64,000 bases of DNA from positions 1 to 64,000 of the IMG/VR virus record IMGVR_UViG_3300030329_004647; one strand, given 5' to 3'. This document shows positions 17,058 through 60,354 of this stretch, piece by piece; within the stretch, counting starts at the first letter, position 1, and every line of letters begins with the position of its first letter. Below the pieces are notes generated by a model. That model saw only the letters and a list, made by a program, of their open reading frames with translations. It did no database searches and was not told the origin of the DNA. Position numbers and translations under genes: made by a program.

Positions 17058-18845
17058 ATGAATCTATTTGAAAATATAAAAATTTTATTAAAAGAAGATA
17101 GAGTTAGTGATGTGCTAAAAAAATATAGTAAAAACCCTAACCTATCCCAAGACCTTTTTGATGTTATAGTACAAGGTAGTAGTGAAATCGCGGGTAACCA
17201 AAAATACTTAGATTGGATTGTTAGTAGATGGTTAAAATCTAGAGCAGATAATCCAGAAACAGTTACATCATCTAAAGAAAGTGCACAAGAGGTTATCGAC
17301 GCGGTAAGAACCTTTGATAAGGTAAGAAATACTTTAGACATTAAGAACTTATACGATTATAAAACCATCACCCAATTATTTGATACTTTAAGAGCGGTAC
17401 AAAAAAAAGCAAGAAGAAATGTAAGTAGTAGAGAGGACGCTACTAAAGTTTTTGAAAATGACCAGTTTACTATTATGGTGCCAGAAAGTAAAGAAGCTTC
17501 GTGTTATTATGGTGCTGGTACAAAATGGTGTGTCGCGTCTACCGATACTGATTCTCATTATAACAATTATAAACAGTCTGGAGAACTTTACTACATAATT
17601 GATAAAACAAAACCTACATCGGACCCGACATACAAGGTAGCTCTTAATAAAAAATTAACAGGGGAGGAAGATTATTGGAATGCTATAGATAAAATGATAA
17701 CAGATACATCACTTATTGATTCTATAGTAAATAACGAAGATTTAATGAAGACAATAAGAGTACATTTTGAAGGTATTCATGGAGAAAGAGCAGCTCAGGC
17801 AGAAAGAGAAAGAAAACAAAGAGAACAAGAAAGAGCAACACAAGATGCAGAAAGAAGACAACGAGAAAGACAAAGGAGAGCACGTTTAAACGCTGAAGCA
17901 CAGACTAGAAGAGAAAATGGTGAATGGGAAGAATATGATTTAGCTCATGCATTGATGACATATTTAATTGAAAATGGTGATTGGGAAGGAAGTAGTAAAG
18001 AAGAAATACAAGACCAAATAGACACTCTAAGAGATGAAATGGAAAATGACCCAGAAGTTATAAATGACCCAGATGGTCCAAGAGCTCAGGAGTACGGGGA
18101 AGATTTAAATAATTTAGAAGAAGAATTAGAAGAGGCAGAAGATGTTTATGAGTTAATCCCAGAACCTTATGAGACTGAGGACTATGCAGGATTTGAATAT
18201 GGTGGAGCTGAATGGTTAGTGGCGACAGAGGAGGGTGCTGATGAATATGCATATGAAAGAGTAGAAAGTTTAATAGACGATATAGGATATGAAGGATTCA
18301 ATGAAGGATTTGTAGACAATCATATAGATGGTGACCAAATGGCAAATTATTATGAGGAGTGGTTTAGAGATGAGGTAGAAGAAGAACCAGACAGTTATTT
18401 AGATAATGATATCTATGGTGATGATATGGAGTTAACAAGTGAAGCAAAAGAAGAGATTGAAAAAATAAAAGATGTAATAGGGGAGTTTAATGAGGAACTA
18501 GAAGAAACCGATGACCCAATCATGAGGGAGGAACTAGAAGATAAAATACAAGATTTAGAAAGTGAGATAGAAGACCTTGAAGACGATGAAGATTCTTATG
18601 AATTTACAGACGAGGCAAAAGAAAGATATGTAGAGGGTAGAATGGACGATATAAGATATGACCCTGCTGCTTTTATGAGAGACTATGGGATGGAAAGAGA
18701 AATCGAAAACTTTATAGACCAAGAAAGTTTTATTGAGGACGTAATAAACTCTGATGGTAGAGGTCATACTATTTCTTCCTATGACGGTGAAGAAGATGAG
18801 GTAGAGTATGAAGGAGAAACATATTACATATATAGAATGAATTAA
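17058..18845 (+). CDS. leader-bearing protein with ASCYYGAGTKWC domain and hyperacidic C-terminus
   Basis: MNLFENIKILLKE|D; KVFEND..EASCYYGAGTKWC; charged helix linker; D/E-rich tail. Confidence 0.8.
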   Translation: MNLFENIKILLKEDRVSDVLKKYSKNPNLSQDLFDVIVQGSSEIAGNQKYLDWIVSRWLKSRADNPETVTSSKESAQEVIDAVRTFDKVRNTLDIKNLYDYKTITQLFDTLRAVQKKARRNVSSREDATKVFENDQFTIMVPESKEASCYYGAGTKWCVASTDTDSHYNNYKQSGELYYIIDKTKPTSDPTYKVALNKKLTGEEDYWNAIDKMITDTSLIDSIVNNEDLMKTIRVHFEGIHGERAAQAERERKQREQERATQDAERRQRERQRRARLNAEAQTRRENGEWEEYDLAHALMTYLIENGDWEGSSKEEIQDQIDTLRDEMENDPEVINDPDGPRAQEYGEDLNNLEEELEEAEDVYELIPEPYETEDYAGFEYGGAEWLVATEEGADEYAYERVESLIDDIGYEGFNEGFVDNHIDGDQMANYYEEWFRDEVEEEPDSYLDNDIYGDDMELTSEAKEEIEKIKDVIGEFNEELEETDDPIMREELEDKIQDLESEIEDLEDDEDSYEFTDEAKERYVEGRMDDIRYDPAAFMRDYGMEREIENFIDQESFIEDVINSDGRGHTISSYDGEEDEVEYEGETYYIYRMN

Positions 18846-29000: not shown

Positions 29001-29417
29001 GGGAGTTGTCTATATTATGATGAAAATAGTGTAACAGGACCAGGTACACCTTATTGGTTAAATGATTCATGTTACGCTTGGGTAGTATATGATGTTGACC
29101 CATACTGTATGACAAATCAATGGGATGCTTTTTGTCAATCACAATATGATTATTGTGAATTTGGAACACCAATTGGATTAAATGAAATGACACGTGACCA
29201 AGTTTTGATTTTTCCTAATCCAACTAATGACTTAGTAACTATTAGGTCTAAAGAATCAGTAGATGTAAATATTTATGACTTCTTAGGTAATTTAATATTT
29301 GAATTAAAATCAATACAAGAAGAAAAGGTGGACCTGCGACCTTATTCTTCCGGTATTTATAATATACAACTTACTTACAAAGGTATAATTATAAATCATA
29401 AAGTAGTTAAACAATGA
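26046..29417 (+). CDS. T9SS-secreted Cys-repeat protein
   Basis: Sec signal peptide; about 18 GCxDxxAxNYxPxA..C repeats; C-terminal IFPNPTN..IYDFLGN..SGIYNI..KVVKQ sorting domain. Confidence 0.88.
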   Translation: MRNFLLIILCFISFGVVAQNDSWLNLQIQFDNYPEELDWKLFQLDTLAPNNILVAEGGPYYSTPNQHLLNVFIPNLHSNETYILEVHDSFGDGLSWPNNGYVYLSNICTDTISYVEGDFGPFFTDTLTVSPCNSPPLGCPDTLALNYDSLAQYTDMSVCTYPPCTSGLDTLYVEPICDNGVSKLYWQWSDQTDTNPNCGIIGYYRGTDLNNLPFYPWPSNWPQGGLTTTINQTSQGQMHYFYAMLGDSTLTDTLSIMPIQCILGCTDPTAMNYNPWANEDDGNCQSAQGSCNYGETCVRVIVTPDSYGEETYWSLTDTITGTVLGSVNPGFYSTPGVPVTTNVCAPENSVLEFTLNDQYGDGMCGTCWGGIDGSVLVEACGDTIAHIGPPTPMDFGSDTTFVAVPAPVCTTTGPTVGCMDPGYVEYLPTATQQNPGDCVTPVQLGCVDPMAFNYDSTANQQLITPSCTYTLRLLDGAGDGWFGSWIGITQGDSIIGDFTMTQGDTLDIPIVLDAIKPAKIYFFTLGNSVSTASQCGVQLINPMGQVTFYAGSNPWTDPIIPFPFIYTTIQDCGNSCVPTIPGCMDSTAYNYNPGANVPDTVFPCFYNPGCISPAYLEYHTYLDSVGVAPDFLDPFSCQNLAIFGCMDSTQFNYDQYATVNWTSATDSSDPCVPMIYGCTDATALNYDPLANTENYTCILPIYGCTDSTAFNFNPLANTNNGTCIAVIEGCTDPTAMNYNPNANTDDFSCIAYIYGCTDSTMWNYNPLANTDNGTCEPFVYGCTDVIAANFDPLANTNNNTCYYNPGCTDPLYVEFYNQGFTADFDDGSCLTLVVYGCTDNTMFNYDPTANVDNGSCEPFVYGCIDSTMFNYDPLANTDNGTCVPFIYGCMDATMFNYDPLANTNQVSETDISNPCIPIIYGCTDSTAFNYDPYANTDNGTCEAVVYGCTDEYDFPAYLDSTYINYLPGFSTVTTYNVDVTANTDDGSCLYYDENSVTGPGTPYWLNDSCYAWVVYDVDPYCMTNQWDAFCQSQYDYCEFGTPIGLNEMTRDQVLIFPNPTNDLVTIRSKESVDVNIYDFLGNLIFELKSIQEEKVDLRPYSSGIYNIQLTYKGIIINHKVVKQ

Positions 29418-31522: not shown

Positions 31523-33928
31523 ATGCAAATCAACAAGTATCCCACCGCGACCATCTTTGGTGTATATATTCTATTTCTATTATTTCTACTATTCAACTCA
31601 ACACAATTAGTAGCTCAAACTATAACCATACAAGACCAACAAACCTTAGAACCCATCCCCTTTGCGAATATTTCGTCCTACCAGTTGTTAATAACAGAAA
31701 CAGCTAATGGGTTTGTTACAGATTCAGTTAGGGTTGGTACAACAACAGACATCAATGGTCATGCTGATATTTCAGACTGGTCCGATGATATGTTACTACA
31801 TATATCATTTCTTGGTTATGAAAAAAGAAAGATAACTAAAGGAGAGATATTAAAAAAGAATAATGTTATTTTCTTAAGAGAGACCGCACAGTTTTTAGAA
31901 CAAGTGGTAATATCTGCTAGTAAGTTTAGAGAAAAAAGAGAAGATGTGGCTTATTCTATAGAATCTTTAGATAGAAAAACCATAGAAAACGCAAATGTAA
32001 CACAAACTCCAGACCTTCTTACAAAAACTAATGGAGTAACAATTCAAAAGTCACAATTAGGTGGAGGTTCCCCAATCATAAGAGGATTTGAAGCTAATAG
32101 AGTTCTATTAGTAGTTGATGGTGTTAGAATGAATAACGCGATTTATCGTTCTGGTCACTTACAAAATTCTTTAACAATTGACCCTAATGCAGTAGAAATA
32201 GTGGAAGTGGTATTTGGTCCTTCATCCACGATTTATGGGAGTGATGCGTTAGGAGGGGTAATACATTTTTATACACGTAAACCACAATTTAGTAAGAATG
32301 ATAAAATATTTACCCAAACAAAGGTTGTGAGTCGTATGTCTCTTGCTGATGAAGGAATGTCTACTCATATAGATTATAACATAGGAGGTAAAAATGTTGC
32401 TAATTTTACCAGTTTAACATATACTAGTTTTGGGGATTTGAGGATGGGTCAAAACAGAAATCATGGGTATGATGATTGGGGGTTGGCAAACTATTACATT
32501 AACGAGAACGACGAAATGGTGGAAAATGAGAATTCTCATATACAAGTAGGTACAGGTTATGAACAATATGATTTACTTAATAATCTTACATGGAAAGCAA
32601 CTCCAGAAATAATTTTAAGATGGAACACCCAACTATCCACTACTACAAATATACCTAGATATGATAACCTACAAGATTATAATGATGGTGAGTTAAAATG
32701 GAGTGAATGGCACTACGGACCTCAGACTAGATTTTTTACTTCACTACAAGGTAATGTATATAAACAAACTAAATTTTATGATAATTTTAGAGTAACATCC
32801 GCATATCAATTCATTAAAGAGGATAGAATAACAAGAAAGTATCAATCAGAGGATTATAATAACACATATGTAGATGTACACGTATCCAGTATTAATTTTG
32901 ACCTTTCAAAGAAAAAACTTTTATACGGGTTTGAGTTTGTTAATAACCAAGTAATATCTACCTCAACGGCAGGAACTCAACCAAGATATCCTTCAGGTGG
33001 AAGTGACTTAACATCAATCGCAGCTTATACAACATATAAACATCACTTTTCAGAAAAATTCTTAATTGCGGGTGGGTTAAGATATTCTTCCATATTTGCA
33101 AACATGTCTTTTAACAATGATGACCCTGTATTTGTTACTGATGAAATAAATGCAACAAACGGCGCACTTACGGGAAATATAAATAGTGTTTGGAAACCAG
33201 GGAATGGGTGGAAATTCGATGTTGTTGGAAGTACAGGTTTTAGAAGTCCAAACATTGATGACTACGGTAAAGTCTTTGTTAAAAGAGGTGACATGGTTAT
33301 CCCTAATCCAGACCTTACACCAGAATATGCTTATAATACAGAAGGTACTTTGACTAAAACTTGGTCCAACATATCCTTAGCTGGAACAATATATAATACA
33401 TGGTTAAGAGATGCTATCACCAAACAAGATTTAGGGTATAGTCAAATACATGAAGACGAAGAAGTAAATGTGCAAACCCTGATGAATACTGAGGAAGCCT
33501 ATGTTAGAGGTATTTCTTTAGTTGGGAAATACGAACCAGTAGAAGAACTTTATTTTGAATCCTCATTTAACCTACAAAAAGGATATGATATATCAAATGA
33601 TGAACCTCTTGGTCATATTCCACCCGCATATGGTAAATTTTTAACTAGATTTAAACTTAAAAAATTTGAAGGAAGGGTTTGGTACGATTACGCTTTACCT
33701 AAATTATTAGAGAATTCTAATGGGGCGACGGACAATATTGATTTAGCGACTGATGAAGGTTGGCCTTTTTGGTATACACTTAATTTAAGTATGACCTATA
33801 ATATAAACAAAGGTCTTACAATGCAAATAGGGTTGGAAAATTTAATGGACCTACACTATAGAACATTCGCTTCTGGTCTTTCAGCACCAGGAAGAAATGT
33901 GATAATAAAAGCACAATATAAATTTTAA
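31523..33928 (+). CDS. TonB-dependent receptor (Bacteroidota type, N-terminal CarboxypepD_reg-like domain)
   Basis: EQVVISAS, GGGSPIIRGFEANRVLLVVDGVRMNN, FGPSSTIYGSDALGGVI, FRSPNIDD, C-terminal PGRNVIIKAQYKF. Confidence 0.95.
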   Translation: MQINKYPTATIFGVYILFLLFLLFNSTQLVAQTITIQDQQTLEPIPFANISSYQLLITETANGFVTDSVRVGTTTDINGHADISDWSDDMLLHISFLGYEKRKITKGEILKKNNVIFLRETAQFLEQVVISASKFREKREDVAYSIESLDRKTIENANVTQTPDLLTKTNGVTIQKSQLGGGSPIIRGFEANRVLLVVDGVRMNNAIYRSGHLQNSLTIDPNAVEIVEVVFGPSSTIYGSDALGGVIHFYTRKPQFSKNDKIFTQTKVVSRMSLADEGMSTHIDYNIGGKNVANFTSLTYTSFGDLRMGQNRNHGYDDWGLANYYINENDEMVENENSHIQVGTGYEQYDLLNNLTWKATPEIILRWNTQLSTTTNIPRYDNLQDYNDGELKWSEWHYGPQTRFFTSLQGNVYKQTKFYDNFRVTSAYQFIKEDRITRKYQSEDYNNTYVDVHVSSINFDLSKKKLLYGFEFVNNQVISTSTAGTQPRYPSGGSDLTSIAAYTTYKHHFSEKFLIAGGLRYSSIFANMSFNNDDPVFVTDEINATNGALTGNINSVWKPGNGWKFDVVGSTGFRSPNIDDYGKVFVKRGDMVIPNPDLTPEYAYNTEGTLTKTWSNISLAGTIYNTWLRDAITKQDLGYSQIHEDEEVNVQTLMNTEEAYVRGISLVGKYEPVEELYFESSFNLQKGYDISNDEPLGHIPPAYGKFLTRFKLKKFEGRVWYDYALPKLLENSNGATDNIDLATDEGWPFWYTLNLSMTYNINKGLTMQIGLENLMDLHYRTFASGLSAPGRNVIIKAQYKF

Positions 33929-41848: not shown

Positions 41849-41856
41849 TATTTATT
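41849..41856 (+). promoter_or_regulatory. TATTTATT motif (putative late promoter)
   Basis: 5 nt before ATG 41862. Confidence 0.45.
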
Positions 41857-41861
41857 TGTAT

Positions 41862-44800
41862 ATGAAATCCAAAACTACATACTATACAGACGACTGGAAG
41901 GAGAAACTCGTAGATGACTTCTATACTGAATATTACCCCAAACCAAGACTAGAACAATCTATTTTTAAGTATTTAGATAATTTATATTATATAAGTGAGG
42001 ACGAAATATTTGGTACTATCTATAGAAAATCTGACGATTACTTTATGGGTAAAACTCAAATCACCGATGATTTACAAAATTTATTTGGTTTAACCTTACC
42101 TAATCTTTTAAAGATAGGTCCAGGGGAAGATGATTATATTGAACCCGCTAGAAATCCAATCCCTAGAAGGGTTTTAAATAATTGGATGAAAAGTAAACGA
42201 AATACAGAAAGACTTCAGAAAGAATCAATAGTAAAAGATAGTATTGTTTGTGATAATTGTGGATGGAACTGGAAAATAAAAGATGGTGGTGATGATTTAT
42301 ATATTTGTCACAAATGTAATCATAATAACACCCCTTTAAATGAACATAAAGAATCTAAAATAAATCCACAGTTAATGATAGGTGATGAAATCACTGTAGT
42401 TGATGTTGATGAAAGTTTTGGTACACTCCATACACCAGAACGATATAAAGATTATGTGGTTATAGGTAGACGACACAGACAACCAGAAAATTGGGAAGGA
42501 CCCGATGCGGATACTAGTTATTATGTGATAGAACCATTAAGTGGTTATAGTGATAAGGAAACATTAGGTCGTATGTTATCTGGTGGTGGAAGAAAAAGAG
42601 AAGAACAACTCCACCCAACAGATAAATGGATGTTAAGAAAAGGATTTTTAAGAGGAGAACATTTAACTGAACAAAAATCACTAAAAAATAATTTACTTAA
42701 TGTAGAATTAGAAGAAGGTGATAAAATACTTGTAGTGAGTAGAAAGGAGACACCAGCAGGATATAGAGAACCCTTACCAGACCACGACGTAGAGTTATTC
42801 ACCACCTATGTGGTTATAGAGAAAAGATATAGTGGGCATAAAGCAAAACACCCTTACCATTATTTCTTATTACCAGAGGAACAGTATGAGATTTTTATAA
42901 ACGACCCATATGATGATAGTGTAGATAAATCGGTAAAATCATTATTCCCTTGGATACACGATTGGATTTTAGATAATGAAGATATAATGACTGAACATAA
43001 AGAATCAAAAATTAATCCTGAGTTAGAAGTAGATGACATCATAAGAATAATTGATGTTGATGGGGAACATGATAGAAAACCAGAAAAATTTAAGTTATAT
43101 AGAGTAGCGTATAAGGGAAATAAACCAATTGGACATGGGTACTCGTGGGAAACAGAACCTAGAATATGGTATGATATAGTACCAACAGACCTTGACTACG
43201 ATACAGTAAGAACTTTTGATTCAAGGGGCACACCAATGTATCACAGTAAAAGTTTATATCCTGGAGATACATGGATTAAAATGGATGAAGTTATTAGTGA
43301 ACAGAGTGCTGATAGTCCAGGTGACAACATAAGTGATGATGATGAAGAATACGTAGACAATACACCGTTTACCAAAAAAGAAATTTTAATCTTAAATCAA
43401 TTACACAAAAAATTAACTAAAGATGAATTACACTCTCTTGTTATTGATACACCAGGAAAAGGAAGTTCGGATTACTACCAACACCAAGCTAAGTTTTGGG
43501 AAGTTATGAAATTATTTGGGATGGATTATAAAAATGACGCTCCCTACCAGACTAGAATTTCACAGTACGCTAAATGGGCATTAGACAATTGGACTCCAGA
43601 AGGTGATTATGGAAAGATTGGAAATCCCCTAAAAGTACCACTTAAATGGTACAATGTATCGAGAGAGGAAACAGGTACTCAAGTAGAGTATAAATCTGGT
43701 GAGGCAGAGGTACTAGGGTTTGATTATGATAATGCAGAAGAGAGAGCTAATAATGAATTTTGGGAATGGGGTGGAGAAATGGAACCATTTGATTATGGAG
43801 ACTATGAGGCACACGATAGTGAAATTACAGGTATTGACTTTGTTAGATTGGATGAAGCGAAAAGAATAGTGAAGGTGTTAAATGAACAAGATGAATCAGG
43901 TTTAGAAAGACAAATAATTCAAGCGGAAACTGAAGACTTCCAAGAACTTATGTATGAGGTTTTGAGAAGAGTTAGACAGATTCCGTTGGATAAAACAGTA
44001 TCACCTAGAAGAATTAAAGAAATTTTAAGTGATGACGGAGTAAGTTTCGACCTCTATCAAGGAGCAGACCTTAATGAGGAAATACATAGAGAATACAATA
44101 GAGTAAGATTTTATGAATATAGTCAACAACTTTTAAAAGCTGCACATTCAAAAGGAGTAAGAGGTCACTATTTTGAAGGTTTATTAGCAGGATTATTTAA
44201 TGGTGAAGTTGTTAGTCCGATGGAAGGGGAAATGACCGACCCAAAAGAAGATGTCCTTATTAATGGTATTAACTACTCAGCTAAATTGGTACGTGCTCAA
44301 GATAAAAAATGGGGAACATCCAGTTTACTAGGGGGATTTAAAAAAGCAATAATTCAAAGACTAGTGGATAGAGACATCGAAGTACCTGATGAATTATTGA
44401 AACGAAAGTTAGAGGTTAAAACTCTTAATGAGTTAGTAGTTTTATTTCCCGAAGGAGACCCAGATAGAGAGTCTTTTCAAGTTAGACATATGGAATTGTT
44501 TTTAAAAGATTCATCTGTAGACAGAAAGTATAAAGAGATAACAATGAACTATGCTTTTACCAGTAAATCAGAAGAGGAAATAGGTATAGAATTACATTGG
44601 ATTTTTGGATTAATATGGGGTACCAATGAGACTTTTGAAGGAGAAGAATTACCTACTACTAATTTAAAATATTATTTAATGGATACTCCTAGTTTAATAG
44701 ATGGAATACTCGATGGTGATATTCATTTTACAAAAGGTAGAAACATTAGGGAAATTAGAATATCGGAAAAAAGCATGATAGACTCAAATGGGGCTAGTGA

Positions 44801-45815
44801 ACACTCAATCATATTTCCAGTGATTACAAGACAAGACCTTAAAAATTTATTATATGACGAAAAGTCAGAAGAAATGGTTTATAAGGTAATGGGTATATTT
44901 AAAGACTTCAGACCAGGTACTGAAAAATATATGCATCATAAAATAGCTGATGTAATCGCTGATAATCCACAAGAGTTTATTAAAAGGTTACAAGATTTAT
45001 TTCCAGAAAAGAAAATCACAAAAGAAACTTTTTCCAGAATTATAGAAAATATAGATACTACAGAAATAAAATATGCTATAGACCAACAATATAGAACTGA
45101 ACCTGATTTAAAATCTGATATTATACAATCAATACTTGGAGACGAAGAAACAACTGAGGATACTTTTTATTTAAACCCACAAGGTGTAGAATTAAACGTA
45201 CCACCAATCAAAATAGCACAAAAGGTTAGTGATATTAATGATTATGGTGAGATTAATTTTGAAATGCAGGGTGGAAACGGTATCGCTTATTTTACAGATA
45301 AAGACTTAGTAATAAAACTTACAACTGATGAATCTGAATATCACACAGCGACTAAACTACTAGGAACAGAAAATAAACATATTGCTAATGTGTTAGAAAG
45401 TGCAAAAATTAACACTTCACATATAAAAGGTGACCTTTTTATGATAGTAACAGAAGCTTTACATATGACCAAAGAGATGGAAGAAATATGGCACAAATGC
45501 TGTTGTTCAGAAACAGACCCAATTTATATAGATTATACTCAAGAACCAGCTAGACCTATATCACCAGTATCAGAACATGCAATATGTCAACCTATATATG
45601 ATAATATTATATCAATAATTAGTGATTTAACGTCACATGGAATAACTTGGAGTGATATTGGGATAGATAATCTAGGTATTAAAAATGGAAAACTAGCCTT
45701 AATAGACTTAGGAGATAGTCAAGGTGGGTCACTTAAAGGTAAAATACTAACATTAGAAAGGAGAAATGATTTAATACAAAGAGAACTTTTATATGAAGAT
45801 GTATTCCCTAACTAA
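41862..45815 (+). CDS. polyprotein 1: Zn ribbon, 3 SH3-like repeats, acidic domain, nuclease-like and protein-kinase-like domains
   Basis: modules delimited by LNE|H, LTE|Q, MTE|H, ISE|Q, LNE|Q, IIE|N; kinase motifs GGNGIAY, VIK, DIGIDN, IDLG. Confidence 0.8.
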   Translation: MKSKTTYYTDDWKEKLVDDFYTEYYPKPRLEQSIFKYLDNLYYISEDEIFGTIYRKSDDYFMGKTQITDDLQNLFGLTLPNLLKIGPGEDDYIEPARNPIPRRVLNNWMKSKRNTERLQKESIVKDSIVCDNCGWNWKIKDGGDDLYICHKCNHNNTPLNEHKESKINPQLMIGDEITVVDVDESFGTLHTPERYKDYVVIGRRHRQPENWEGPDADTSYYVIEPLSGYSDKETLGRMLSGGGRKREEQLHPTDKWMLRKGFLRGEHLTEQKSLKNNLLNVELEEGDKILVVSRKETPAGYREPLPDHDVELFTTYVVIEKRYSGHKAKHPYHYFLLPEEQYEIFINDPYDDSVDKSVKSLFPWIHDWILDNEDIMTEHKESKINPELEVDDIIRIIDVDGEHDRKPEKFKLYRVAYKGNKPIGHGYSWETEPRIWYDIVPTDLDYDTVRTFDSRGTPMYHSKSLYPGDTWIKMDEVISEQSADSPGDNISDDDEEYVDNTPFTKKEILILNQLHKKLTKDELHSLVIDTPGKGSSDYYQHQAKFWEVMKLFGMDYKNDAPYQTRISQYAKWALDNWTPEGDYGKIGNPLKVPLKWYNVSREETGTQVEYKSGEAEVLGFDYDNAEERANNEFWEWGGEMEPFDYGDYEAHDSEITGIDFVRLDEAKRIVKVLNEQDESGLERQIIQAETEDFQELMYEVLRRVRQIPLDKTVSPRRIKEILSDDGVSFDLYQGADLNEEIHREYNRVRFYEYSQQLLKAAHSKGVRGHYFEGLLAGLFNGEVVSPMEGEMTDPKEDVLINGINYSAKLVRAQDKKWGTSSLLGGFKKAIIQRLVDRDIEVPDELLKRKLEVKTLNELVVLFPEGDPDRESFQVRHMELFLKDSSVDRKYKEITMNYAFTSKSEEEIGIELHWIFGLIWGTNETFEGEELPTTNLKYYLMDTPSLIDGILDGDIHFTKGRNIREIRISEKSMIDSNGASEHSIIFPVITRQDLKNLLYDEKSEEMVYKVMGIFKDFRPGTEKYMHHKIADVIADNPQEFIKRLQDLFPEKKITKETFSRIIENIDTTEIKYAIDQQYRTEPDLKSDIIQSILGDEETTEDTFYLNPQGVELNVPPIKIAQKVSDINDYGEINFEMQGGNGIAYFTDKDLVIKLTTDESEYHTATKLLGTENKHIANVLESAKINTSHIKGDLFMIVTEALHMTKEMEEIWHKCCCSETDPIYIDYTQEPARPISPVSEHAICQPIYDNIISIISDLTSHGITWSDIGIDNLGIKNGKLALIDLGDSQGGSLKGKILTLERRNDLIQRELLYEDVFPN

Positions 45816-45838: not shown

Positions 45839-48800
45839 ATGGCCAATACTACATTACATAAAAACAAAATATCTAGAGAAGACCTATTAAGCTTCTACAA
45901 TACCCCAATACCACAGATAGGGGACAGAATACAAATTTTAGAAACCACTAACGTTGTTGAATCAGGTGAGGTTTTTAATGTTAAAGGTGTACACAGAACA
46001 TCCCAAGGTGTCTTTATAAAATTACAAGAAATTAAAGATAGGTTACCTTTATATTTACATGATGAAGAGACGGTAGAAAATACAACTAAAATTCGTATAT
46101 TAAATCCAAAAAATTTCAACAGCCCTCCACAGTCTTTACTAGAAAAAGGTGATTTTATAATGGTAGAAAATACCCCTTCACCTTTATATGTACTTAAACA
46201 AGACAACCATATTGTAGAAACATTAAGTTTACATCCACTAGGTTTGGATATTAAGAAGATAAATTTAAATGAAAGAAAACATAAATTGTTAAAAGAAAAT
46301 GAGGAAAAGACAACTAAATCTAAAATTTATGACAACCCTGAAGTAAAGGTTGATGACAAAGTACAAATTTTACATGTTCACCATCCTAATAGTTTTAATA
46401 AAAAGTATATTGGTGAAACAGGTATAGTAAAAAGAATTAGTCAGAATGAAAGTGAAGTTCACATAGCGGTAGATTTTGGAGAAGATGATTATAGAAGAAT
46501 AGGTAGTGATGTTGTATACCCTATGTTTAAGATAAAAGGAAAGGTACTAGGTGATTTATACCTACGTGACGGTTCCCCTGAACAAGTTTGGGTAGATAGG
46601 GATTTAGTTAGAATAGTACCAGAACCCATCGTTGAACAAAAAGAAAAAGAAGTAAGTCCTGACCTCCAACTAGGAGATAGAATAATGACTTGGGACATAA
46701 CACCAGACGATACACCACCAGGAGGTCTACGTGCTGAAGATGACTGGGAACCACCCAGTACTTTCATAGCTACAGTAATATCGGTATGTGAAGATTGTTA
46801 TAACCCAAAATATGAAAATGGAATAAAGTATGTGGTAAGGATTGATGATACTGGTGAAGAGGTCGGTCTATATGGGGGTGAAATAGTAGAGGACCAGATG
46901 TCAACTAAATTTTCTACAGAATATACCCCAATAACTTATGAAGGTAGAGATAAGTGGATAAAATTACCTAAGTTAGATATTACAGAAGAATCAGATATAT
47001 TTGGACAAGGATTAATGGACCCTATTGAACCTGAGGAGTTTGAGGGTACGGATAAAGATTGGGAAGAGTTAATTAGTGGTATAGAAGAACCAGCAGATGA
47101 ACCTGAATATGAATATGAAGGAGGTAAAACCGACCCAGAAAAAGGGTTTGTTGCCCCATCTAAAGAAGTTACAGATAATATATGTAAAGTTAAAGGATTT
47201 TGTGAAGCTCAAGGACCTATTACATTTGGTCAACTAAAAGAATTAGTTGAAGAAGCAACATCCAAAAGAATCCAAGCAGATATGGGAAGAGGAGCATTCA
47301 AGACTCTATGGAGAATTGTTCCATTCTTTGTCCCTCAAATACTATTACCAGCTATCGGTGTTACAATAACAAGAGCCATCAACAAATTAGTTACTCCAGC
47401 TTTAAAAGATACAAGAGGGTATAAAGAATGGTGGGGAAAAGTTGTATTAAAAGCTATGGATATTGCAGAAGGAGATTACATCCCTGACCTTGCTATGGGT
47501 GATGACCCTATAAGTAAAGTATTCTTTATTTCTGATGGTTTACTACAAATGATTAAAGATAAATACAAACTTAAATTTGCGAGATATGTTGCAGATGTTG
47601 CAGCATCCAAACCAGATGATGAACCAGTTCCAGATTGGTTCGTGGATAATTTACTAAGAGATTACTTAAATCAAAAATTCTTATTAGACCCACCATTACC
47701 CATAAGACAATCAACGAATGATTTAGAAGGAATAGAATTGGAGGAAGATTTAAGAAATTGGGGATATAAAGATGGTAAAATAGGACCACTTAAAGAACAG
47801 ACAGAAGTAGAAGTTGTGGATGATAATATAGGGGGTTTAGATAAGGCAGGTGGTTATGTAGAAAATAGAAAATTTACACCCAAAGAATGTAAAATATTAA
47901 AACTACTATCTAATAGATTTGAGTTTGATGAGTTGCAGAAATTAGTAAATGTAGATTCACATGCATTATCTGGTGAATTCCAGAATAAATGGGGAGACAC
48001 CATGAAATTAATTGGAGAACCTCTTGGTTCAAATGAAACATGGGGTAAATCACTTAGATGGGCATCTTGGATTATTGATAATTACGACTATGTGAGTAGT
48101 ACAGGTGATGGGTTTTGTGATATAGAGAAACCCTTAATAAGATATCCATCTATGTACGAAGTACGGGGAGATGATTCAGGATGGGAAAGAATATATAGAA
48201 GTGGTTATATTGAGGTTCCTGCTTTTGATGAGGATGATGCTTACGATAAAGCTGACAACCATTGGTTTGATTACGAACCAGAGATGGAAACCTCTGATTA
48301 TGGTGATTATGAATCCGATGATGATTTAGAATTAGCGGAACCAGAACACATTAAGACTTTAAAAGAACAACAACTACCATTTAATTCAGACAATAAAAAT
48401 ATAGAAAGAGACCATCCTAAAGGTGAACCTGATTGGTCTATTAGAAGAGGTAGACAACATTATGCTATGAATGTTAAGGATACTAAAAGTGAACCAGTAA
48501 CAGCACTTAATAATTATCTAGTTAAAAACTCACCATTTAACTTTTTAGGTTTTGATTATTATCTAACCGCAGTTCCAGGTAGAATGCCAAACCAAGCTAA
48601 TGTAGATATATTTGTACCTATGTTGGATACAGGATATAATGCTGATAAATTATGGACTACAAGATTTTCACCAGTGGTTAATTTAGATATACATGATGAT
48701 GAGGGTCCATACTTAGAATCTACAATTGAATTTCTCCACCAAATTAGAGCAGATGAAAAATGGCCAGAATATTATATGTATGATGAGGTTAGAGATAAAT

Positions 48801-56415: not shown

Positions 56416-57417
56416 ATGAGACAATCAAAAATACTACAAATTATACGGGAAGAAATAGACCACCAAGAAAACGGACTTATTTTTGAGGGAGTAAATTCTT
56501 ATACCCCTACAAAGGGATATAGGAATAACCAACTTATAGAAGTTTATGATAGTAAGGGTAAACAACTTATTAATGAAGGAATGATTGATACTGTACAAAG
56601 TGTTTTAGATTATGCGGGATTTATTCCTGGTATTGGAGACCTTTTAGATGGGGTAAACGCTTTAATTTATATGATAAGAAAAAAGTATTTTTTAGGTGTA
56701 ACTTCTTTAGTTGCGGTTATTCCAGCTGTAGGAAGTGTGATAGCAGCACCATTTAAAGCAGCACACAAATTATTAGGTAAGGCAGCGAATAAATTAGGGA
56801 GTATTTTAGGTAAAATGGTTTCTAATGGTAAGAGTGCAGCTTCAGAATTGATAAAATTGTTACAAAGTGGTGGAACCAAACTTAAAGGGGTGACTGATAA
56901 AATTTATAAAGCTATTTCTAAAAATGTATCTAAAATAAACTCATTCTTAGATAAAGTCATACCAACACTAAATAATAAAATAAAAGATTATTCATGGGGT
57001 TATTTTGCATTACCAAATGCATTTGTTAAATCAGGAAACGCTATCATTAAACAAATGAAACAATTTTTTACACAATTAGGTAAACCAGCGTCCTATCAAG
57101 TTAGTAAAAAAGTAGCAAAGAGTGAGGTAAAGAAAGAACTTAAACCAGAAGAAAAAAAGACTAATTATAAAAACTATATAGCAAAATTAAGTAAAAAATA
57201 CAATGTACTCCGATATGGTAAAGAAAATGATTGGGGACAAAATAGATATGCGTTTTATAATAAAGATTGGCATTTTATTTGTCCAGATGGTTCTACGGGA
57301 AAAGCTTGTACCACTAGTAAAACCAAAGAGTTTACTCATGGTATTGTAAAACTCGCTGACGATAATAAAGCTAAGATAGCTCTAAAAAATTATATGGACG
57401 CTAAAAAAACAGCTTAA
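56416..57417 (+). CDS. leader-bearing protein with pre-toxin TG-like domain
   Basis: INE|GMIDTVQSVLDYAGFIPGIGDLLDGVNALIY...LVAVIPAVG; basic C-terminus. Confidence 0.7.
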   Translation: MRQSKILQIIREEIDHQENGLIFEGVNSYTPTKGYRNNQLIEVYDSKGKQLINEGMIDTVQSVLDYAGFIPGIGDLLDGVNALIYMIRKKYFLGVTSLVAVIPAVGSVIAAPFKAAHKLLGKAANKLGSILGKMVSNGKSAASELIKLLQSGGTKLKGVTDKIYKAISKNVSKINSFLDKVIPTLNNKIKDYSWGYFALPNAFVKSGNAIIKQMKQFFTQLGKPASYQVSKKVAKSEVKKELKPEEKKTNYKNYIAKLSKKYNVLRYGKENDWGQNRYAFYNKDWHFICPDGSTGKACTTSKTKEFTHGIVKLADDNKAKIALKNYMDAKKTA

Positions 57418-58512
57418 ATGAAAGATATAATTAAAAAAATATTAAGAGAACAAATTTCTACTGAATTAGAACAAGACCTTAATGCTTTTCATCCAGATTT
57501 ATTTGAATTAGAAGAAGGTAAAAAGAAGAAGAAAAAAAAGAAAAAAGCTAAGAGAGACGCTTGTTATCATAAAGTTAAAAGTAGATATAAGGTTTGGCCT
57601 TCAGCTTATGCTTCAGGAGCTCTTGTTAAATGTAGAAAGGTTGGAGCAAAAAATTGGGGTAATAGTACAAAAGAAGGGGTTAAGTTAGATGAAGGAATGT
57701 ATGGTATGTCAGAACCATTAGATTATGTTGTAGTAGATATGAGAAATTTAAGACCACTCATGATGAACTATGGAGATGGTCAATATTATGAAAAATGGCA
57801 AACAGAATTAGACGCTCAAAAATCAGCAGACGACTTAAATAGAGCTTACCAAAAAACATATGGTGCGGTAGAAGGACCCCATGTTGTTATGTATAAATCT
57901 GATTACTTTACTGAAAAAAGAAAAGAAGATATGATGGAGGGTAAGAAGAGAAAGTTAACCAAAAAACCTAGTTCAGAAACAAGTTTAAGAGATTGGTTTG
58001 GTAGAAAAGGTGCTAAAGGAAGTACTGGAGGTTGGGTAGATTGTAACGCACCAGATGGGAAAGGTGGTTATAAATCTTGTGGAAGAAAAGAAGGTGAAAG
58101 TAGAAAAAAATACCCAGCATGTAGACCTACACCAGCTGCATGTAAAAGTAAAGGAAAAGGAAAAAAGTGGGGTAAAAAGAGTAAAAATGAATCTATAACA
58201 GAACAATATGGTAATTTTGTTAGATGGGGTGAGTTAATAACCGAGGCAGAGTATAAAGGTAGAAAAGTAAAACTTAATAAACCAACTAGAGGTGATGTTA
58301 AGAAGTTTAAGGTTTATGTTAAAAACGATAAAGGTAATGTAGTTAAAGTTAACTTTGGTCATGGAGGTACTTCGGCAAAAAAGAGAGGAGAAAAAACAAT
58401 GAGAATTAAAAAAAGTAATCCTGAAAGAAGGAAAGCTTTTAGAGCGAGACATAATTGTGACAACCCAGGACCAAAATGGAAAGCTAGATATTGGTCATGT
58501 AAAGCTTGGTAA
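57418..58512 (+). CDS. leader-bearing fusion of small basic Cys-containing modules
   Basis: MKDIIKKILRE|Q; WPSAYASGALVKC; GGWVDC..KYPACRP; EAEYKGRKVKLNKP..RARHNC..RYWSCKAW. Confidence 0.75.
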   Translation: MKDIIKKILREQISTELEQDLNAFHPDLFELEEGKKKKKKKKKAKRDACYHKVKSRYKVWPSAYASGALVKCRKVGAKNWGNSTKEGVKLDEGMYGMSEPLDYVVVDMRNLRPLMMNYGDGQYYEKWQTELDAQKSADDLNRAYQKTYGAVEGPHVVMYKSDYFTEKRKEDMMEGKKRKLTKKPSSETSLRDWFGRKGAKGSTGGWVDCNAPDGKGGYKSCGRKEGESRKKYPACRPTPAACKSKGKGKKWGKKSKNESITEQYGNFVRWGELITEAEYKGRKVKLNKPTRGDVKKFKVYVKNDKGNVVKVNFGHGGTSAKKRGEKTMRIKKSNPERRKAFRARHNCDNPGPKWKARYWSCKAW

Positions 58513-58514
58513 CT

Positions 58515-59108
58515 ATGAAACTCCTAGATGTGTTATCGGAACAAATAGAAAGTAATTCTAATCAAGTAGAAAAAAGACTTAGAACACTATTCAGTGCAAT
58601 GCAGGACATCAAAGGAATAGACAACGTCGTGGGGTGTATATCATCAGAAAAATCTAGAGAAAATTGTATGGGTCGTCAGGGGTATATTGTAACCCAAACT
58701 GAGGTTTTGTCATTATTAAGATTATTTGGATATAATGCTTTGGATAAGATGAGATTTGACCAATTTGACATGTTTTATTGGTTAGCTACTTGTTTTATAG
58801 CGAACGGTGGTTACGCAAGGACTTTTAGTCAAGGACCTCTAGAGGCAGTTAATTTAGAAATAAATGTGAGAGAAATGCAAGCTGAATATGATGAAGAACG
58901 TATAGAAACAAGAGAGGGATGGGGTGATTTATATGATATGAGTGATGATGAGGATGCTAAACAATATTATTTAGATAATTTTGAGAGTTTAATGACGGAT
59001 AATGAACACCTAGATGATGATTGGGGTGATATAATAGATGTAAGAAACCCACAGGTAGTTGCACATAGAATAATAAAACTCAACCCTGAATGGATAGGAC
59101 TAAAATGA
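58515..59108 (+). CDS. leader-bearing acidic-domain protein (start moved to MKLLDVLSE|Q)
   Basis: LLRLFG...acidic tail resembles the SDTLKLYG family. Confidence 0.7.
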   Translation: MKLLDVLSEQIESNSNQVEKRLRTLFSAMQDIKGIDNVVGCISSEKSRENCMGRQGYIVTQTEVLSLLRLFGYNALDKMRFDQFDMFYWLATCFIANGGYARTFSQGPLEAVNLEINVREMQAEYDEERIETREGWGDLYDMSDDEDAKQYYLDNFESLMTDNEHLDDDWGDIIDVRNPQVVAHRIIKLNPEWIGLK

Positions 59109-59821
59109 AAGATTTAATTAAAAAAATATTAAAAGAAGAATTGTTAACTGAATCTGCGTTTACACAAGAAATTGCTGTAGACCTATGGAAAAATGTTCTT
59201 GCGTATCCACAAAATAGAACTAAAAAAACTTATGATTACTTAGATTATGTTGATGGAGAAACAGCATTTGGTGCTTTACACTGGACTACCAGTGGATTTC
59301 CACAACTCTATGAGATTATGGGTAATACTATAACTAAACATTATTTTGGTAAAACTGTAGAAGAAATGATAGAGTTTAGTAAGAGTGTAAATGGTGAAGA
59401 ATTAGAGTATGAATGGTGGGAAGACGGTATGAACGACTTTATAAATGGACCTTACAACGAATCCGTCCAAAATCAAGCAATCCATGATAAATTCAGTCAA
59501 AAATTTGCTAGGAGTAAATATGGTGGTGTAATAAATAAATGGACAACACTAAGAGAATTTGCTATAGGAATGTCTTTAATTAATTCTGCTCCGGCGTGTT
59601 TTTTAAGAGGAAAACAATATGGGTGGGACGCTGAAGAAATGATGAGAGATTATTGTAAAGGTACTGGAGAGAAAAGTAATATTCCATCTTCTGAAGAATC
59701 CGGCTGTTATAAAACAAGGGGGTGTAGAAGTAGATGTGAAAACATCAATAAATTTTATCCAGCGCCTAGTAAAAGTGGTTATGTCTGGTCTGACGAAGAA
59801 CATGATAAGTATTGTTCATGA
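59105..59821 (+). CDS. leader-bearing protein, possible lysozyme-like fold
   Basis: MKDLIKKILKE|E; DGETAFGALHWT motif; Cys-rich C-terminus. Confidence 0.6.
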   Translation: MKDLIKKILKEELLTESAFTQEIAVDLWKNVLAYPQNRTKKTYDYLDYVDGETAFGALHWTTSGFPQLYEIMGNTITKHYFGKTVEEMIEFSKSVNGEELEYEWWEDGMNDFINGPYNESVQNQAIHDKFSQKFARSKYGGVINKWTTLREFAIGMSLINSAPACFLRGKQYGWDAEEMMRDYCKGTGEKSNIPSSEESGCYKTRGCRSRCENINKFYPAPSKSGYVWSDEEHDKYCS

Positions 59822-60354
59822 GACGGTTAATCCAAAGAATACTCCTAGAAGAAACAACCTCTAAAGTTTTATTAGTTTTCGGTGGTATAAATCAAGCTAC
59901 TCCAGAATGGATGGGGAATCAAATTCCTAGTAGAATTAAAAATCAGTACGATAAAATAATCCTCAAAAGTTATAGAAGTAGAGATTTGTTAGAATCAATA
60001 GACTCTCTTAAAGAAATGAAAAACACCAATATTAGTGTAGTAGGTTTTTCACAAGGAGGTCTCAATACCTACAGATTAGCCAATAGTGGTGTAAAGTTAG
60101 ACTTTCTAGGTTTAATAGACCCATCAGTTAAAAGTGACTGGTCATTAAAAGGATTTCCTTCCGGTCGAAATTCTGTGTTATTCTACAATAATAAAAACTG
60201 GGGTAAACAGTACTATGACAAATACATTGTGTGGAGAAATGAATTAGCGGAAGAGATGAGAAGTAGTGGTATGGAAGTAGTAGAAGAAGATTTAAATCCA
60301 CATATAAATGACCATATGTTATTCCCTAGAGAATTTTTTAATAGGTTTATGTAG
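59818..60354 (+). CDS. leader-bearing alpha/beta hydrolase
   Basis: MRRLIQRILLE|E; nucleophile elbow VVGFSQGG; LIDPS; C-terminal His. Confidence 0.75.
   Translation: MRRLIQRILLEETTSKVLLVFGGINQATPEWMGNQIPSRIKNQYDKIILKSYRSRDLLESIDSLKEMKNTNISVVGFSQGGLNTYRLANSGVKLDFLGLIDPSVKSDWSLKGFPSGRNSVLFYNNKNWGKQYYDKYIVWRNELAEEMRSSGMEVVEEDLNPHINDHMLFPREFFNRFM

What the first reader, a model, noticed from the sequence alone, without database searches (positions are those of the whole stretch)
45839..51202. Polyprotein 2 (1787 aa): nine or more modules with the same junction grammar
Seen: junctions LKE|N (46289), IVE|Q (46628), ITE|E (46979), LKE|Q (47789, 48359), IKE|H (49055), LTE|Q (49472), LEE|Q (50267), LRE|E (50588). 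The modules include SH3-like units, a hydrophobic-helix module (LWRIVPFFVPQILLPAIGVTIT), acidic domains shared with polyprotein 1 and gene 53336, an HExxH unit and a P-loop kinase. Module types are shared with polyprotein 1 but in different order and number. Inference: a shuffling cassette system for effector accretion.
Basis: partly seen in the sequence, partly recalled or inferred. Interest (0 to 1): 0.8.

Follow-up and report, generated by a model that had tools for sequence, protein, structure and literature searches.

The report
Cut-site-delimited cargo polyprotein of jumbo phage
This 1787-residue gene of a ~280 kb marine T4-like phage strings together ten independent protein modules, each separated by the short Leu/Ile-x-Glu motif that T4-type head proteases cut, so it is most likely a precursor chopped into separate injected proteins inside the phage head.

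Summary
All nine junction coordinates are exact. Bare [LI]xE is not enriched (33 vs 27 expected), but [LI]xE-Q is (5 vs 0.85), and comparison with relatives gives stronger support. Pieces cut at the junctions match over 30 other giant proteins end to end, in different orders and numbers. In 39 of 55 module starts defined by homology, [LIVM]xE lies just upstream (background 2.5%) although the flanking sequence is unrelated. Several modules also exist as stand-alone genes. Their 6-14-residue N-terminal leaders, most often M-K-x-L-I-K-K-I-L-K/R-E, end at the position that is a junction in the window's gene. At least eight neighbouring genes carry this leader, and so do at least 130 genes in viral metagenome contigs. 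The same genome encodes a T4 gp21-type prohead protease, and its major capsid protein has LINE|A aligned with T4's FLTE|A cut site. Best reading: the junctions are T4-style head-protease sites and the leader is a counterpart of T4's capsid-targeting sequence. The gene is then a precursor of head-packaged proteins, including a zincin and a P-loop kinase. Cleavage and packaging are inferred, not shown. This is a new variant of two known ideas: T4 internal proteins and phage 'polyvalent proteins'. The 'SH3-like' label is unverified, and junction 1 has no comparative support.

The parts
45839..51202 (+). pp2: 1787-aa multi-module precursor gene (ten modules, B1-B10)
45839..46297 (+). module B1 (aa 1-153), ends LKE|N; beta-rich, function unknown; this junction has no comparative support
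46298..46636 (+). module B2 (aa 154-266), ends IVE|Q (alternative cut at VPE 260-262, where homologues have LKE|Q)
46637..46987 (+). module B3 (aa 267-383), small beta module related to pp1 modules A2-A4 (hhalign 92%, E 7e-7); ends ITE|E, with Glu383 nearly invariant
46988..47797 (+). module B4 (aa 384-653): acidic linker plus helical domain with hydrophobic helix; more than 50 homologues, many stand-alone with an N-terminal leader; ends LKE|Q inside a low-pLDDT linker
47798..48367 (+). module B5 (aa 654-843): well-folded alpha/beta domain (pLDDT ~90), paralogous to pp1 483-677 and gene 53336 aa 12-210; recurs in most long homologues; no PDB or BFVD fold match; ends LKE|Q
48368..49063 (+). module B6 (aa 844-1075), function unknown; stand-alone homologue P0008 (217 aa, 88% identity) starts MKTLKE|QQLPF; ends IKE|H
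49064..49480 (+). module B7 (aa 1076-1214): minimal HExxH zincin (invariant H1166, E1167, H1170, plus Q, Y, E, E, W); ends LTE|Q
49481..50275 (+). module B8 (aa 1215-1479): acidic, Cys-rich, function unknown; ends LEE|Q
50276..50596 (+). module B9 (aa 1480-1586), function unknown; ends LRE|E
50597..51199 (+). module B10 (aa 1587-1787): P-loop kinase (AAA_33 / zeta-toxin-like); stand-alone 221-aa gene in relatives L003/L004 (84% identity) with leader MRNLIKKILRE|E
41856..45815 (+). pp1: 1319-aa sister precursor; modules A1-A7 cut at LNE163, LTE272, MTE380, ISE482, LNE677, IIE1064; A7 (aa 1065-1319) is protein-kinase-like
53336..54706 (+). gene 53336 (456 aa): leader MKNLIKQILKE|Q followed by a B5-type module
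54728..56170 (+). leader MKTLIKKILRE|T plus M23 peptidase, peptidoglycan-binding and SLT lytic transglycosylase domains
53088..53339 (+). 83-aa gene with leader MKARIKKILRE|F
56183..56413 (+). 76-aa gene with long-type leader MKKIKLTEETLGRIVKRVIME|Q
56416..57417 (+). 333-aa gene with leader MRQSKILQIIRE|E and hydrophobic segments
57418..58512 (+). 364-aa very basic protein with leader MKDIIKKILRE|Q (phrog_727 domain)
58515..59108 (+). 197-aa gene with short leader MKLLDVLSE|Q
59105..59821 (+). 238-aa gene with leader MKDLIKKILKE|E
59818..60354 (+). 178-aa gene with leader MRRLIQRILLE|E
51752..52615 (+). 287-aa gene with third leader type (..NRIRGLHLTE|SKDKRLTSVLCE|Q), shared with the 855-aa gene next to the capsid gene
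17058..18845 (+). 595-aa gene with leader MNLFENIKILLKE|D; its GTKWC core motif recurs in the C-terminal module of pp3

Best explanation
pp2, with its sisters pp1 and a third 1426-aa gene about 40 kb downstream, is a precursor of proteins that are packaged in the phage head.

Shown:
- The gene is a chain of ten autonomous modules.
- Each boundary carries hydrophobic(P3)-x-Glu(P1), usually followed by Q, E or H.
- The same modules occur in relatives in other orders, or as single genes.
- Those single genes carry a short N-terminal leader, most often M-K-x-L-I-K-K-I-L-K/R-E, which ends in the same motif at the homologous position.
- The same genome encodes a T4 gp21-family (Peptidase_S77) prohead protease.
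- Its gp23-type capsid protein has ..HLINE|A aligned with T4's FLTE|A site.

Inferred:
- The leader works like T4's capsid-targeting sequence, bringing proteins into the scaffold core of the prohead.
- The prohead protease then cuts after the Glu of every exposed junction. This would remove leaders from the single genes and split the giant genes into roughly ten products of 11-31 kDa each.
- The products stay in the head and enter the host with the DNA. Candidate activities are a zincin peptidase, a P-loop kinase, a protein kinase (in pp1), and a cell-wall hydrolase from the neighbouring gene.
- Gene fusion and fission at leader/junction sites would explain the shuffling.
For: Junction grammar:
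- 39 of 55 homology-defined module starts are preceded by [LIVM]xE, vs a 2.5% background. P3 is L 26 and I 17 of 55; P1 is E 42 of 55.
- Before the 'DIFGQG' start of B4, eleven unrelated upstream contexts all end in hydrophobic-x-E. Before the 'QQFPFNP' start of B6, six of six do.

Modularity:
- Modules match homologues end to end (B3 1-117/117, A2 1-109/109, B10 1-201/201) in more than 30 proteins with different architectures.
- The L005 protein combines pp1 and pp2 modules.
- pp3 shares a module with L005.

Fusion and fission:
- The kinase is a stand-alone gene with leader MRNLIKKILRE|E in L003/L004.
- B6 is stand-alone as MKTLKE|QQLPF, and B4 and B7 occur stand-alone with leaders.

Leader:
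- At least 8 window genes carry it.
- The DNA pattern has 3 exact window matches vs 0.00 expected.
- In IMG/VR there are at least 120 stretches; 132 of 139 matches open ORFs of 60 aa or more.

Protease in the same genome:
- The Tara scaffold is 99.99% identical to the window and to a piece of the window's own contig.
- It carries terminase, Portal_T4, Peptidase_S77, a 473-aa acidic scaffold-like protein and Gp23.
- The protease is 34% identical to T4 gp21 (1e-23).
- The capsid protein's HLINE|A aligns with T4 FLTE|A.

Clade:
- 79 of 80 related capsid proteins keep [LIM]xE|[AST] at that place, and 66 of the 80 loci have an S77 protease alongside.

T4 precedent:
- Read from the T4 record: ipII/ipIII MKTYQEFIAE|A and gp24 MAKINELLRE|S.
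- CTS function and cleavage after Glu are described in PMC5694885.

Structure: the junction at 651-653 lies in the only long low-confidence linker of the model.
Against: - No proteomic or N-terminal sequencing data exist, so neither cleavage nor head location has been observed.
- pp1 and pp2 lack the canonical leader at their own N-termini, so how they would be targeted is unknown.
- pp2 has 45 [LIVM]xE sites, and bare [LI]xE is at chance level. Specificity must therefore depend on accessibility or on P1'.
- Junction 1 is not conserved in the one homologue that spans it. Two homologues have IIED|Q (Asp at P1) at junction 8, and two have PKE at junction 4.
- P1' here is mostly Q, E or H. At the T4 sites read here and in the capsid proteins of this clade, P1' is A, S or T.
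- The leader-bearing cluster lies about 60 kb from the head genes and next to tail-fibre genes.
- The statistics over homologues are not phylogenetically independent.
Confidence: 0.62

Rival explanations
1. The giant genes are uncleaved multidomain 'polyvalent' proteins. The [LI]xE-Q junctions would be relics of the N-terminal leaders of the genes that fused, or a generic helix-capping linker. They would mark fusion points without being cut.
For: Polyvalent phage proteins with 2-15 domains are well documented, and some, such as the N4 virion RNA polymerase, are packaged unprocessed (PMC5512222). The homology between junction and leader is what a fusion history alone would predict. Bare [LI]xE is not enriched.
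Against: Relics should decay. Instead P3 and P1 are kept in 39 of 55 boundaries between proteins only 30-50% identical, while the surrounding residues are unrelated. A protease with matching specificity is encoded in the same genome.
Confidence: 0.17
2. Processing is real but carried out by another protease. Candidates are the embedded HExxH zincin (acting in cis or in trans, perhaps after ejection into the host, as proposed for polyvalent proteins) or the phage ClpP.
For: pp2 and pp3 each hold an HExxH module. Iyer et al. proposed embedded metallopeptidases as releasing enzymes. The window encodes a full-length ClpP, and the genome has a ClpB-like ATPase.
Against: pp1 has no HExxH, and only 13 of 32 long homologues do. 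B7-type zincins themselves carry leaders as stand-alone genes, like other cargo. Cleavage after Glu with L/I at P3 is the signature of the gp21 family and is kept in this clade's capsid protein. ClpP is a processive degrader and has no known site specificity (own knowledge).
Confidence: 0.1
3. The leader and junction motif target these proteins somewhere other than the head interior, for example the tail lumen or baseplate, the host membrane, or a secretion route. Alternatively the conserved 5' sequence acts at the RNA level as a translation signal.
For: The cluster sits beside tail-fibre genes. It includes a cell-wall hydrolase and a protein with a weak tape-measure-like hit. The leaders are A-rich at the DNA level.
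Against: Internal junctions keep the peptide motif where translation initiation is irrelevant. The leaders show synonymous variation: CTA/TTA, ATT/ATC/ATA and AGA/AAA/CGG. Leader-bearing genes also flank the head genes in this genome and in relatives. The leader is charged and amphipathic, not a signal peptide.
Confidence: 0.08

Closest known systems
T4 internal proteins (IPI-III), Alt and gp24, with a capsid-targeting sequence removed by prohead protease gp21
   Same: A short 10-11-residue amphipathic N-terminal leader ending in L/I-x-Glu (T4 MKTYQEFIAE|A and MAKINELLRE|S, vs MKNLIKKILKE| here). A gp21-family protease and gp23-family capsid protein with an aligned cut site in the same genome. 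Highly variable cargo behind a conserved leader. (PMC5694885)
   Different: Many more leader-bearing genes: at least 20 candidates in about 140 kb. At least three leader types. Cargo modules concatenated into 1300-1800-aa genes with the cut motif at every joint, which I did not find described for T4. P1' is mostly Q, E or H rather than A or S.
Polyvalent proteins of phages and conjugative elements (Iyer, Burroughs, Anand, de Souza, Aravind 2017, PMC5512222)
   Same: Giant multidomain, virion-associated proteins that mix peptidase, kinase and unknown domains. Extensive domain shuffling. Solo versions of the domains exist. Release of domains by proteolysis has been proposed.
   Different: In that work, release is attributed to embedded metallopeptidase domains and no sequence rule for the boundaries is given. 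Here a defined junction motif matches the morphogenetic protease, and most modules have no Pfam family. Whether the kinase or zincin here belong to their specific clades was not tested.
Ejection / inner-body proteins of phiKZ-like giant phages (phiKZ, 201phi2-1, SPN3US), processed by a gp21-related protease
   Same: Many head-internal proteins cut after Glu, sometimes at several sites within one protein (SPN3US gp53). Conserved N-termini among paralogues. (PMC5694885, PMC10052503)
   Different: Motif A/S/G-x-E rather than L/I-x-E. Long propeptides (over 100 residues) that are discarded, rather than chains of retained modules. A different phage lineage: this phage's capsid protein is closest to Far-T4-type phages such as Flavobacterium phage immuto, Microcystis phage Mel-JY01 and Rhodothermus RM378.
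Polyproteins of RNA viruses and retroviruses
   Same: One translation product, with defined cut sites between functional units and a virus-encoded protease.
   Different: Here the strategy would serve cargo loading in a DNA phage, not genome expression. The protease is encoded separately. There is no homology.

Membership tests
Substrates of T4 gp21-type (Peptidase_S77) prohead protease | A gp21-family protease is encoded in the same genome | tested here: met
   L309 10664-11365: 233 aa, Pfam PF03420, 34% identity to T4 gp21 (1e-23). It lies on a scaffold 99.99% identical to the window.
Substrates of T4 gp21-type (Peptidase_S77) prohead protease | Cleavage motif L/I-x-Glu at the proposed sites | tested here: met
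   All nine pp2 junctions have L/I at P3 and E at P1, as do 39 of 55 homologous boundaries. The capsid protein of the same genome has LINE|A aligned with T4 FLTE|A.
Substrates of T4 gp21-type (Peptidase_S77) prohead protease | Actual cleavage at these sites in virions | not testable with these tools
   Requires virion mass spectrometry or N-terminal sequencing.
T4-type capsid-targeting-sequence (CTS) proteins | Short conserved N-terminal leader shared by otherwise unrelated proteins and ending in the protease motif | tested here: met
   At least 8 window genes. 139 IMG/VR matches, of which 132 open ORFs. T4 leaders for comparison.
T4-type capsid-targeting-sequence (CTS) proteins | The leader directs the protein into the prohead core | not testable with these tools
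   Needs reporter fusions in a cultured relative.
T4-type capsid-targeting-sequence (CTS) proteins | pp2 itself carries the leader at its N-terminus | tested here: not met
   pp2 begins MANTTLHKNKISRED.. and pp1 begins MKSKTTYYTDDW... Some homologous polyproteins do begin with a leader (P0012/P0013: MYTLKEIRKILNIQE|Q).
Polyvalent proteins (Iyer et al. 2017) | Several unrelated domains in one phage- or plasmid-borne polypeptide, with solo versions and variable architectures | tested here: met
Polyvalent proteins (Iyer et al. 2017) | Presence of their signature domains (MuF, their MPTase clade, the C-terminally truncated kinase clade, ART, etc.) | tested here: inconclusive
   Pfam finds only AAA_33. 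The zincin and protein-kinase-like modules rest on atlas leads and motif reading. Clade membership was not tested.
Zincin metallopeptidase (module B7) | HExxH plus a third zinc ligand, conserved across the family | tested here: met
   Invariant H91, E92, H95 and downstream E116/E123 in 25 sequences. The fold is not verified, and there is no sequence match in the PDB.
SH3-like fold (modules B1-B3) | Five-stranded small beta-barrel | tested here: inconclusive
   The AF2 model is beta-rich but has mean pLDDT 51.

The most novel reading that the evidence does not exclude
A large clade of Far-T4-type phages, with hundreds of contigs in marine and freshwater viromes, may use a universal 'address plus cut site' peptide grammar. 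Under this grammar any protein module could be loaded into the capsid either as a separate leader-tagged gene or as a bead on a giant polyprotein that the head protease separates. Fusion and fission at these sites would give a combinatorial, rapidly evolving arsenal of injected proteins. It would be a DNA-phage counterpart of the viral polyprotein strategy, and it would let cargo be read directly from sequence.
Probability: 0.45. Interest if true: 0.8.

Novelty: new variant of a known kind. Interest (0 to 1): 0.7.

Why it matters
If the junctions are cut, the injected protein repertoire of a very abundant group of uncultured aquatic phages could be predicted from sequence alone: look for the leader or the junction motif. 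That would mark dozens of proteins of unknown function per genome as early host-takeover or counter-defence candidates. It would also explain how giant ORFs arise in jumbo phages, by fusion at leader sites, and show that a morphogenetic protease can double as a polyprotein-processing enzyme. The short leader could become a packaging tag for phages of Bacteroidota, as the T4 CTS did for T4. A cultured relative, Flavobacterium phage immuto, shows similar leaders, so the idea can be tested directly.

Tried and rejected
- Pfam and PHROG scans of whole proteins and of single modules found only AAA_33 in pp2.
- A PDB profile search with the zincin alignment gave nothing.
- Foldseek of the B4+B5 model against PDB and BFVD gave no match at E<=0.001.
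- One large MAFFT alignment of six module families on a 1200-aa query misaligned the fragments and was dropped.
- ClpP (12991-13662) was considered as the head protease. It is a full-length canonical ClpP next to SAM synthetase and far from the head genes, and a true S77 protease exists elsewhere, so I rejected it.
- Finding this genome's head genes through relatives failed. The capsid gene of L236/L298 belongs to another phage: an exact 32-mer from its S77 protease gene does not hit this contig.
- Walking upstream of the window found only metabolic genes. One look-up was lost to an off-by-one stop codon.
- The leader strings were not found in the paper library I could search.
- Reads and RNA tools were not used, because they cannot show proteolysis.
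Full report
**What the window is.** The window is the first 64 kb of IMG/VR contig 3300030329_004647, which is 232 kb long; window and contig coordinates coincide. The same phage occurs in Tara Oceans and JGI assemblies as contigs of 279-280 kb. GC content is about 32%. Genes with a type-IX-secretion sorting domain and a TonB-dependent receptor point to a Bacteroidota host. The capsid protein is closest to Microcystis phage Mel-JY01, Flavobacterium phage immuto and Rhodothermus phage RM378, at 34-42% identity. This is therefore a distant T4-type ('Far-T4') jumbo phage.

**Checking the observation.** ORF 45839-51202 encodes 1787 residues without a stop. All nine junction coordinates are the first base of the stated motif.

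Bare [LI]xE is at chance level: 33 observed against 27.5 expected. The fuller motif is not at chance. [LI]xE-Q occurs 5 times against 0.85 expected (P~0.0008), with similar excess in pp1 and in gene 53336. In 32 long homologues, [LI]xE[QH] occurs 85 times against 26 expected.

**Junctions coincide with domain boundaries defined without using the motif.**
- A search of 1.8 billion representative proteins with residues 384-1583 gave 252 hits. Their matched ranges fall into blocks whose edges are the junctions.
- 27.6% of informative HSP starts lie within 6 residues of the nine junctions. For random [LIVM]xE sites the figure is 8%, and 0 of 5000 random sets reach the observed value.
- I cut pp1 and pp2 at the junctions (modules A1-A7 and B1-B10). 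The pieces match other proteins from first to last residue, for example B3 1-117/117, A2 1-109/109 and B10 1-201/201. They do so in more than 30 different architectures.
- At 55 homology-defined module starts in those proteins, 39 are directly preceded by [LIVM]xE, against a 2.5% background. P3 is L or I in 43 of 55 and P1 is E in 42 of 55. This count is not corrected for relatedness.
- Before the 'DIFGQG' start of B4, eleven unrelated upstream sequences all end in hydrophobic-x-E. Before 'QQFPFNP' of B6, six of six do.
- An AlphaFold model of residues 384-843 (mean pLDDT 74) has one long low-confidence linker, at residues 642-667. It contains LKE|Q 651-653 and lies between a helical domain and a confident alpha/beta domain.
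- Junction 1 (151-153) is the exception: the single homologue spanning it lacks the motif. At junction 2 the homologues' LKE|Q aligns four residues upstream, at VPE 260-262.

**Junctions are homologous to N-terminal leaders.**
- In relatives L003 and L004 the pp2 C-terminal kinase is a separate 221-aa gene (84% identity). It begins MRNLIKKILRE|E.., which aligns with the pp2 junction ..ERLLRE|E.
- B6 exists alone as MKTLKE|QQLPF.. (P0008, 88% identity). B4 and B7 exist alone behind leaders such as MSYLIKKIIKE|E and MNTSIKNILTE|E.
- In the window at least eight genes start with the same 11-residue leader, M-K-x-L-I-K-K-I-L-K/R-E. They are at 17058, 53088, 53336, 54728, 56416, 57418, 59105 and 59818. 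Synonymous codon differences show that the conservation is at the peptide level.
- The degenerate DNA pattern for the leader has 3 exact matches in the window against 0.00 expected.
Of 139 matches, 132 open ORFs of 60 aa or more, encoding very diverse proteins, often several per contig and often on contigs of 200-380 kb.
- Two further leader types occur: M..IKLTE..L..h..VhKE| and ..NRIRGLHLTESKDKRLTSVLxE|.

**The protease.** No head genes lie in the window. The ClpP at 12991-13662 is a canonical ClpP beside SAM synthetase. I walked along Tara scaffold_5. This scaffold is 99.99% identical to the window over 9235 nt, and to a piece of the window's own contig over 8376 nt.

The walk reached the head block at about contig 111-121 kb. 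In order it holds a terminase, Portal_T4, three small genes, Peptidase_S77 (233 aa), a 473-aa acidic scaffold-like protein with 20 [LIM]xE sites, and a Gp23 capsid protein. The protease is 34% identical to T4 gp21 (1e-23). The capsid protein's ..HLINE|ATAADNSGSF.. aligns with T4 gp23 ..FLTE|AEIGG... That is T4's maturation cut by my own knowledge, and the T4 record notes that gp23 is cleaved by gp21.

In 80 related capsid loci, 79 keep [LIM]xE|[AST] at that place and 66 have an S77 protease within 6 kb. Loci retrieved only by the leader pattern also carry S77, Gp23, Portal_T4 or T4-type sheath genes. T4's own leaders, read from its record, are MKTYQEFIAE|A (ipII, ipIII) and MAKINELLRE|S (gp24). 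Their role as capsid-targeting sequences, and cleavage after Glu by gp21-type proteases, are described in PMC5694885.

**Module content.**
- B10 is an AAA_33 / zeta-toxin-like P-loop kinase.
- B7 is a minimal HExxH zincin with invariant H, E, H, Q, Y, E, E, W. The atlas gives M78/SprT-like leads.
- pp1 module A7 is protein-kinase-like, by atlas and by G-loop, VIK, DxxxxN and DLG motifs.
- B5, A5 and the N-terminal domain of gene 53336 are paralogues. This domain recurs in most long homologues and has no fold match.
- B3 is related to pp1 modules A2-A4 (hhalign 92%, E 7e-7).
- 'SH3-like' could not be verified.
- The neighbouring leader-bearing genes include an M23 + SLT cell-wall hydrolase and a very basic protein.
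- A third giant gene (1426 aa, about contig 90.8-95.1 kb) has the same junctions, a second HExxH, and a module 48% identical to part of the L005 polyprotein.

**Interpretation.** The most economical reading is a T4-style system of capsid targeting and proteolytic maturation. In it, cargo modules can be separate leader-tagged genes or can be concatenated with the cut motif at each joint. The shown parts are the grammar, the modularity, the fusion/fission relationships, and the presence of a matching protease and capsid cut site. Encapsidation, cleavage and injection are inferred.

Points against:
- pp1 and pp2 lack the leader at their own N-termini.
- P1' differs from that of the capsid site.
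- Many non-junction [LI]xE sites exist.
- No proteomic data are available.

Rivals are uncleaved polyvalent proteins with relic junctions, processing by the embedded zincin or by ClpP, and targeting to somewhere other than the head. Against the zincin: pp1 has none and only 13 of 32 long homologues have one.

**Relation to what is known.** The concept overlaps with T4 internal proteins, with the ejection proteins of phiKZ-like phages (PMC10052503, PMC5694885), and with the 'polyvalent proteins' of Iyer et al. (PMC5512222). Iyer et al. proposed release of domains by embedded peptidases but gave no boundary rule. I found no paper containing the leader strings in the library I could search. I rate the finding a new variant of a known kind. 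A cultured relative, Flavobacterium phage immuto, has the same head gene order, an S77 protease, a capsid ..QIVSE|ANV site and leader-like N-termini (MKKSQLRQIIKE|A, MKKLIRIVE|A). It offers a direct experimental test.

Noticed in passing
window 12991-13662 (-), 13676-14734 (-); L308 1979-4003 and 4345-6201: The phage encodes a full-length ClpP next to a SAM synthetase. About 100 kb into the contig it also has a ClpB-like AAA+ ATPase and a DnaK/HSP70, making a chaperone/protease set of unknown role.
   Followed up: partly
window 26046-29417 and 31523-33928: A 1123-aa protein with a type-IX-secretion C-terminal sorting domain and an 801-aa TonB-dependent receptor (Plug plus barrel) sit within the tail-fibre region of the phage.
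   Followed up: no
L060, L041, L115, L025, L061: Relatives carry 136-200-aa ORFs built from two permuted conserved segments of the gp23 capsid protein (about residues 247-308 followed by about 100-131). These miniature gp23-like proteins have no obvious function.
   Followed up: partly
L216 5652-9932 (-), about contig 90.8-95.1 kb: A third giant multi-module gene (1426 aa) has junctions RLVE|Q, VLTE|H, RLRE|Q, PIQE|Q and QLTE|Q and a second HExxH. Its C-terminal module shares the GTKWC motif with window genes 17058 and 18848.
   Followed up: partly
window 51752-52615 and 56183-56413; L309 14822-17389; L011 10001, 14596, 18112: Two further conserved N-terminal leader types exist besides MKxLIKKILKE. 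One is a ~21-residue M..IKLTE..L..h..VhKE. The other is a ~33-residue ..NRIRGLHLTESKDKRLTSVLxE, shared by a window gene and the 855-aa gene next to the capsid gene.
   Followed up: partly
window 41856-42344 (pp1 module A1); L099: A CxxC...CxxC zinc ribbon (CDNCGWNWKIKDGGDDLYICHKCNH) in pp1 recurs directly behind a canonical leader in an unrelated contig.
   Followed up: no
window 57418-58512: A very basic leader-bearing protein with a run of eleven Lys and a Cys-containing domain (DACYHKVKSRYKVWPSAYASGALVKCR). The domain is also present in Pelagibacter phages (79% DNA identity over 110 nt) and in Flavobacterium phage immuto.
   Followed up: partly
L012, L013, L215 (flanks of the window in the same genome): The genome has many auxiliary metabolic genes: glutamine synthetase, pyruvate phosphate dikinase, PPK2, thioredoxin/glutaredoxin, PAP2, dTDP-sugar isomerase and DeoC.
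   Followed up: no
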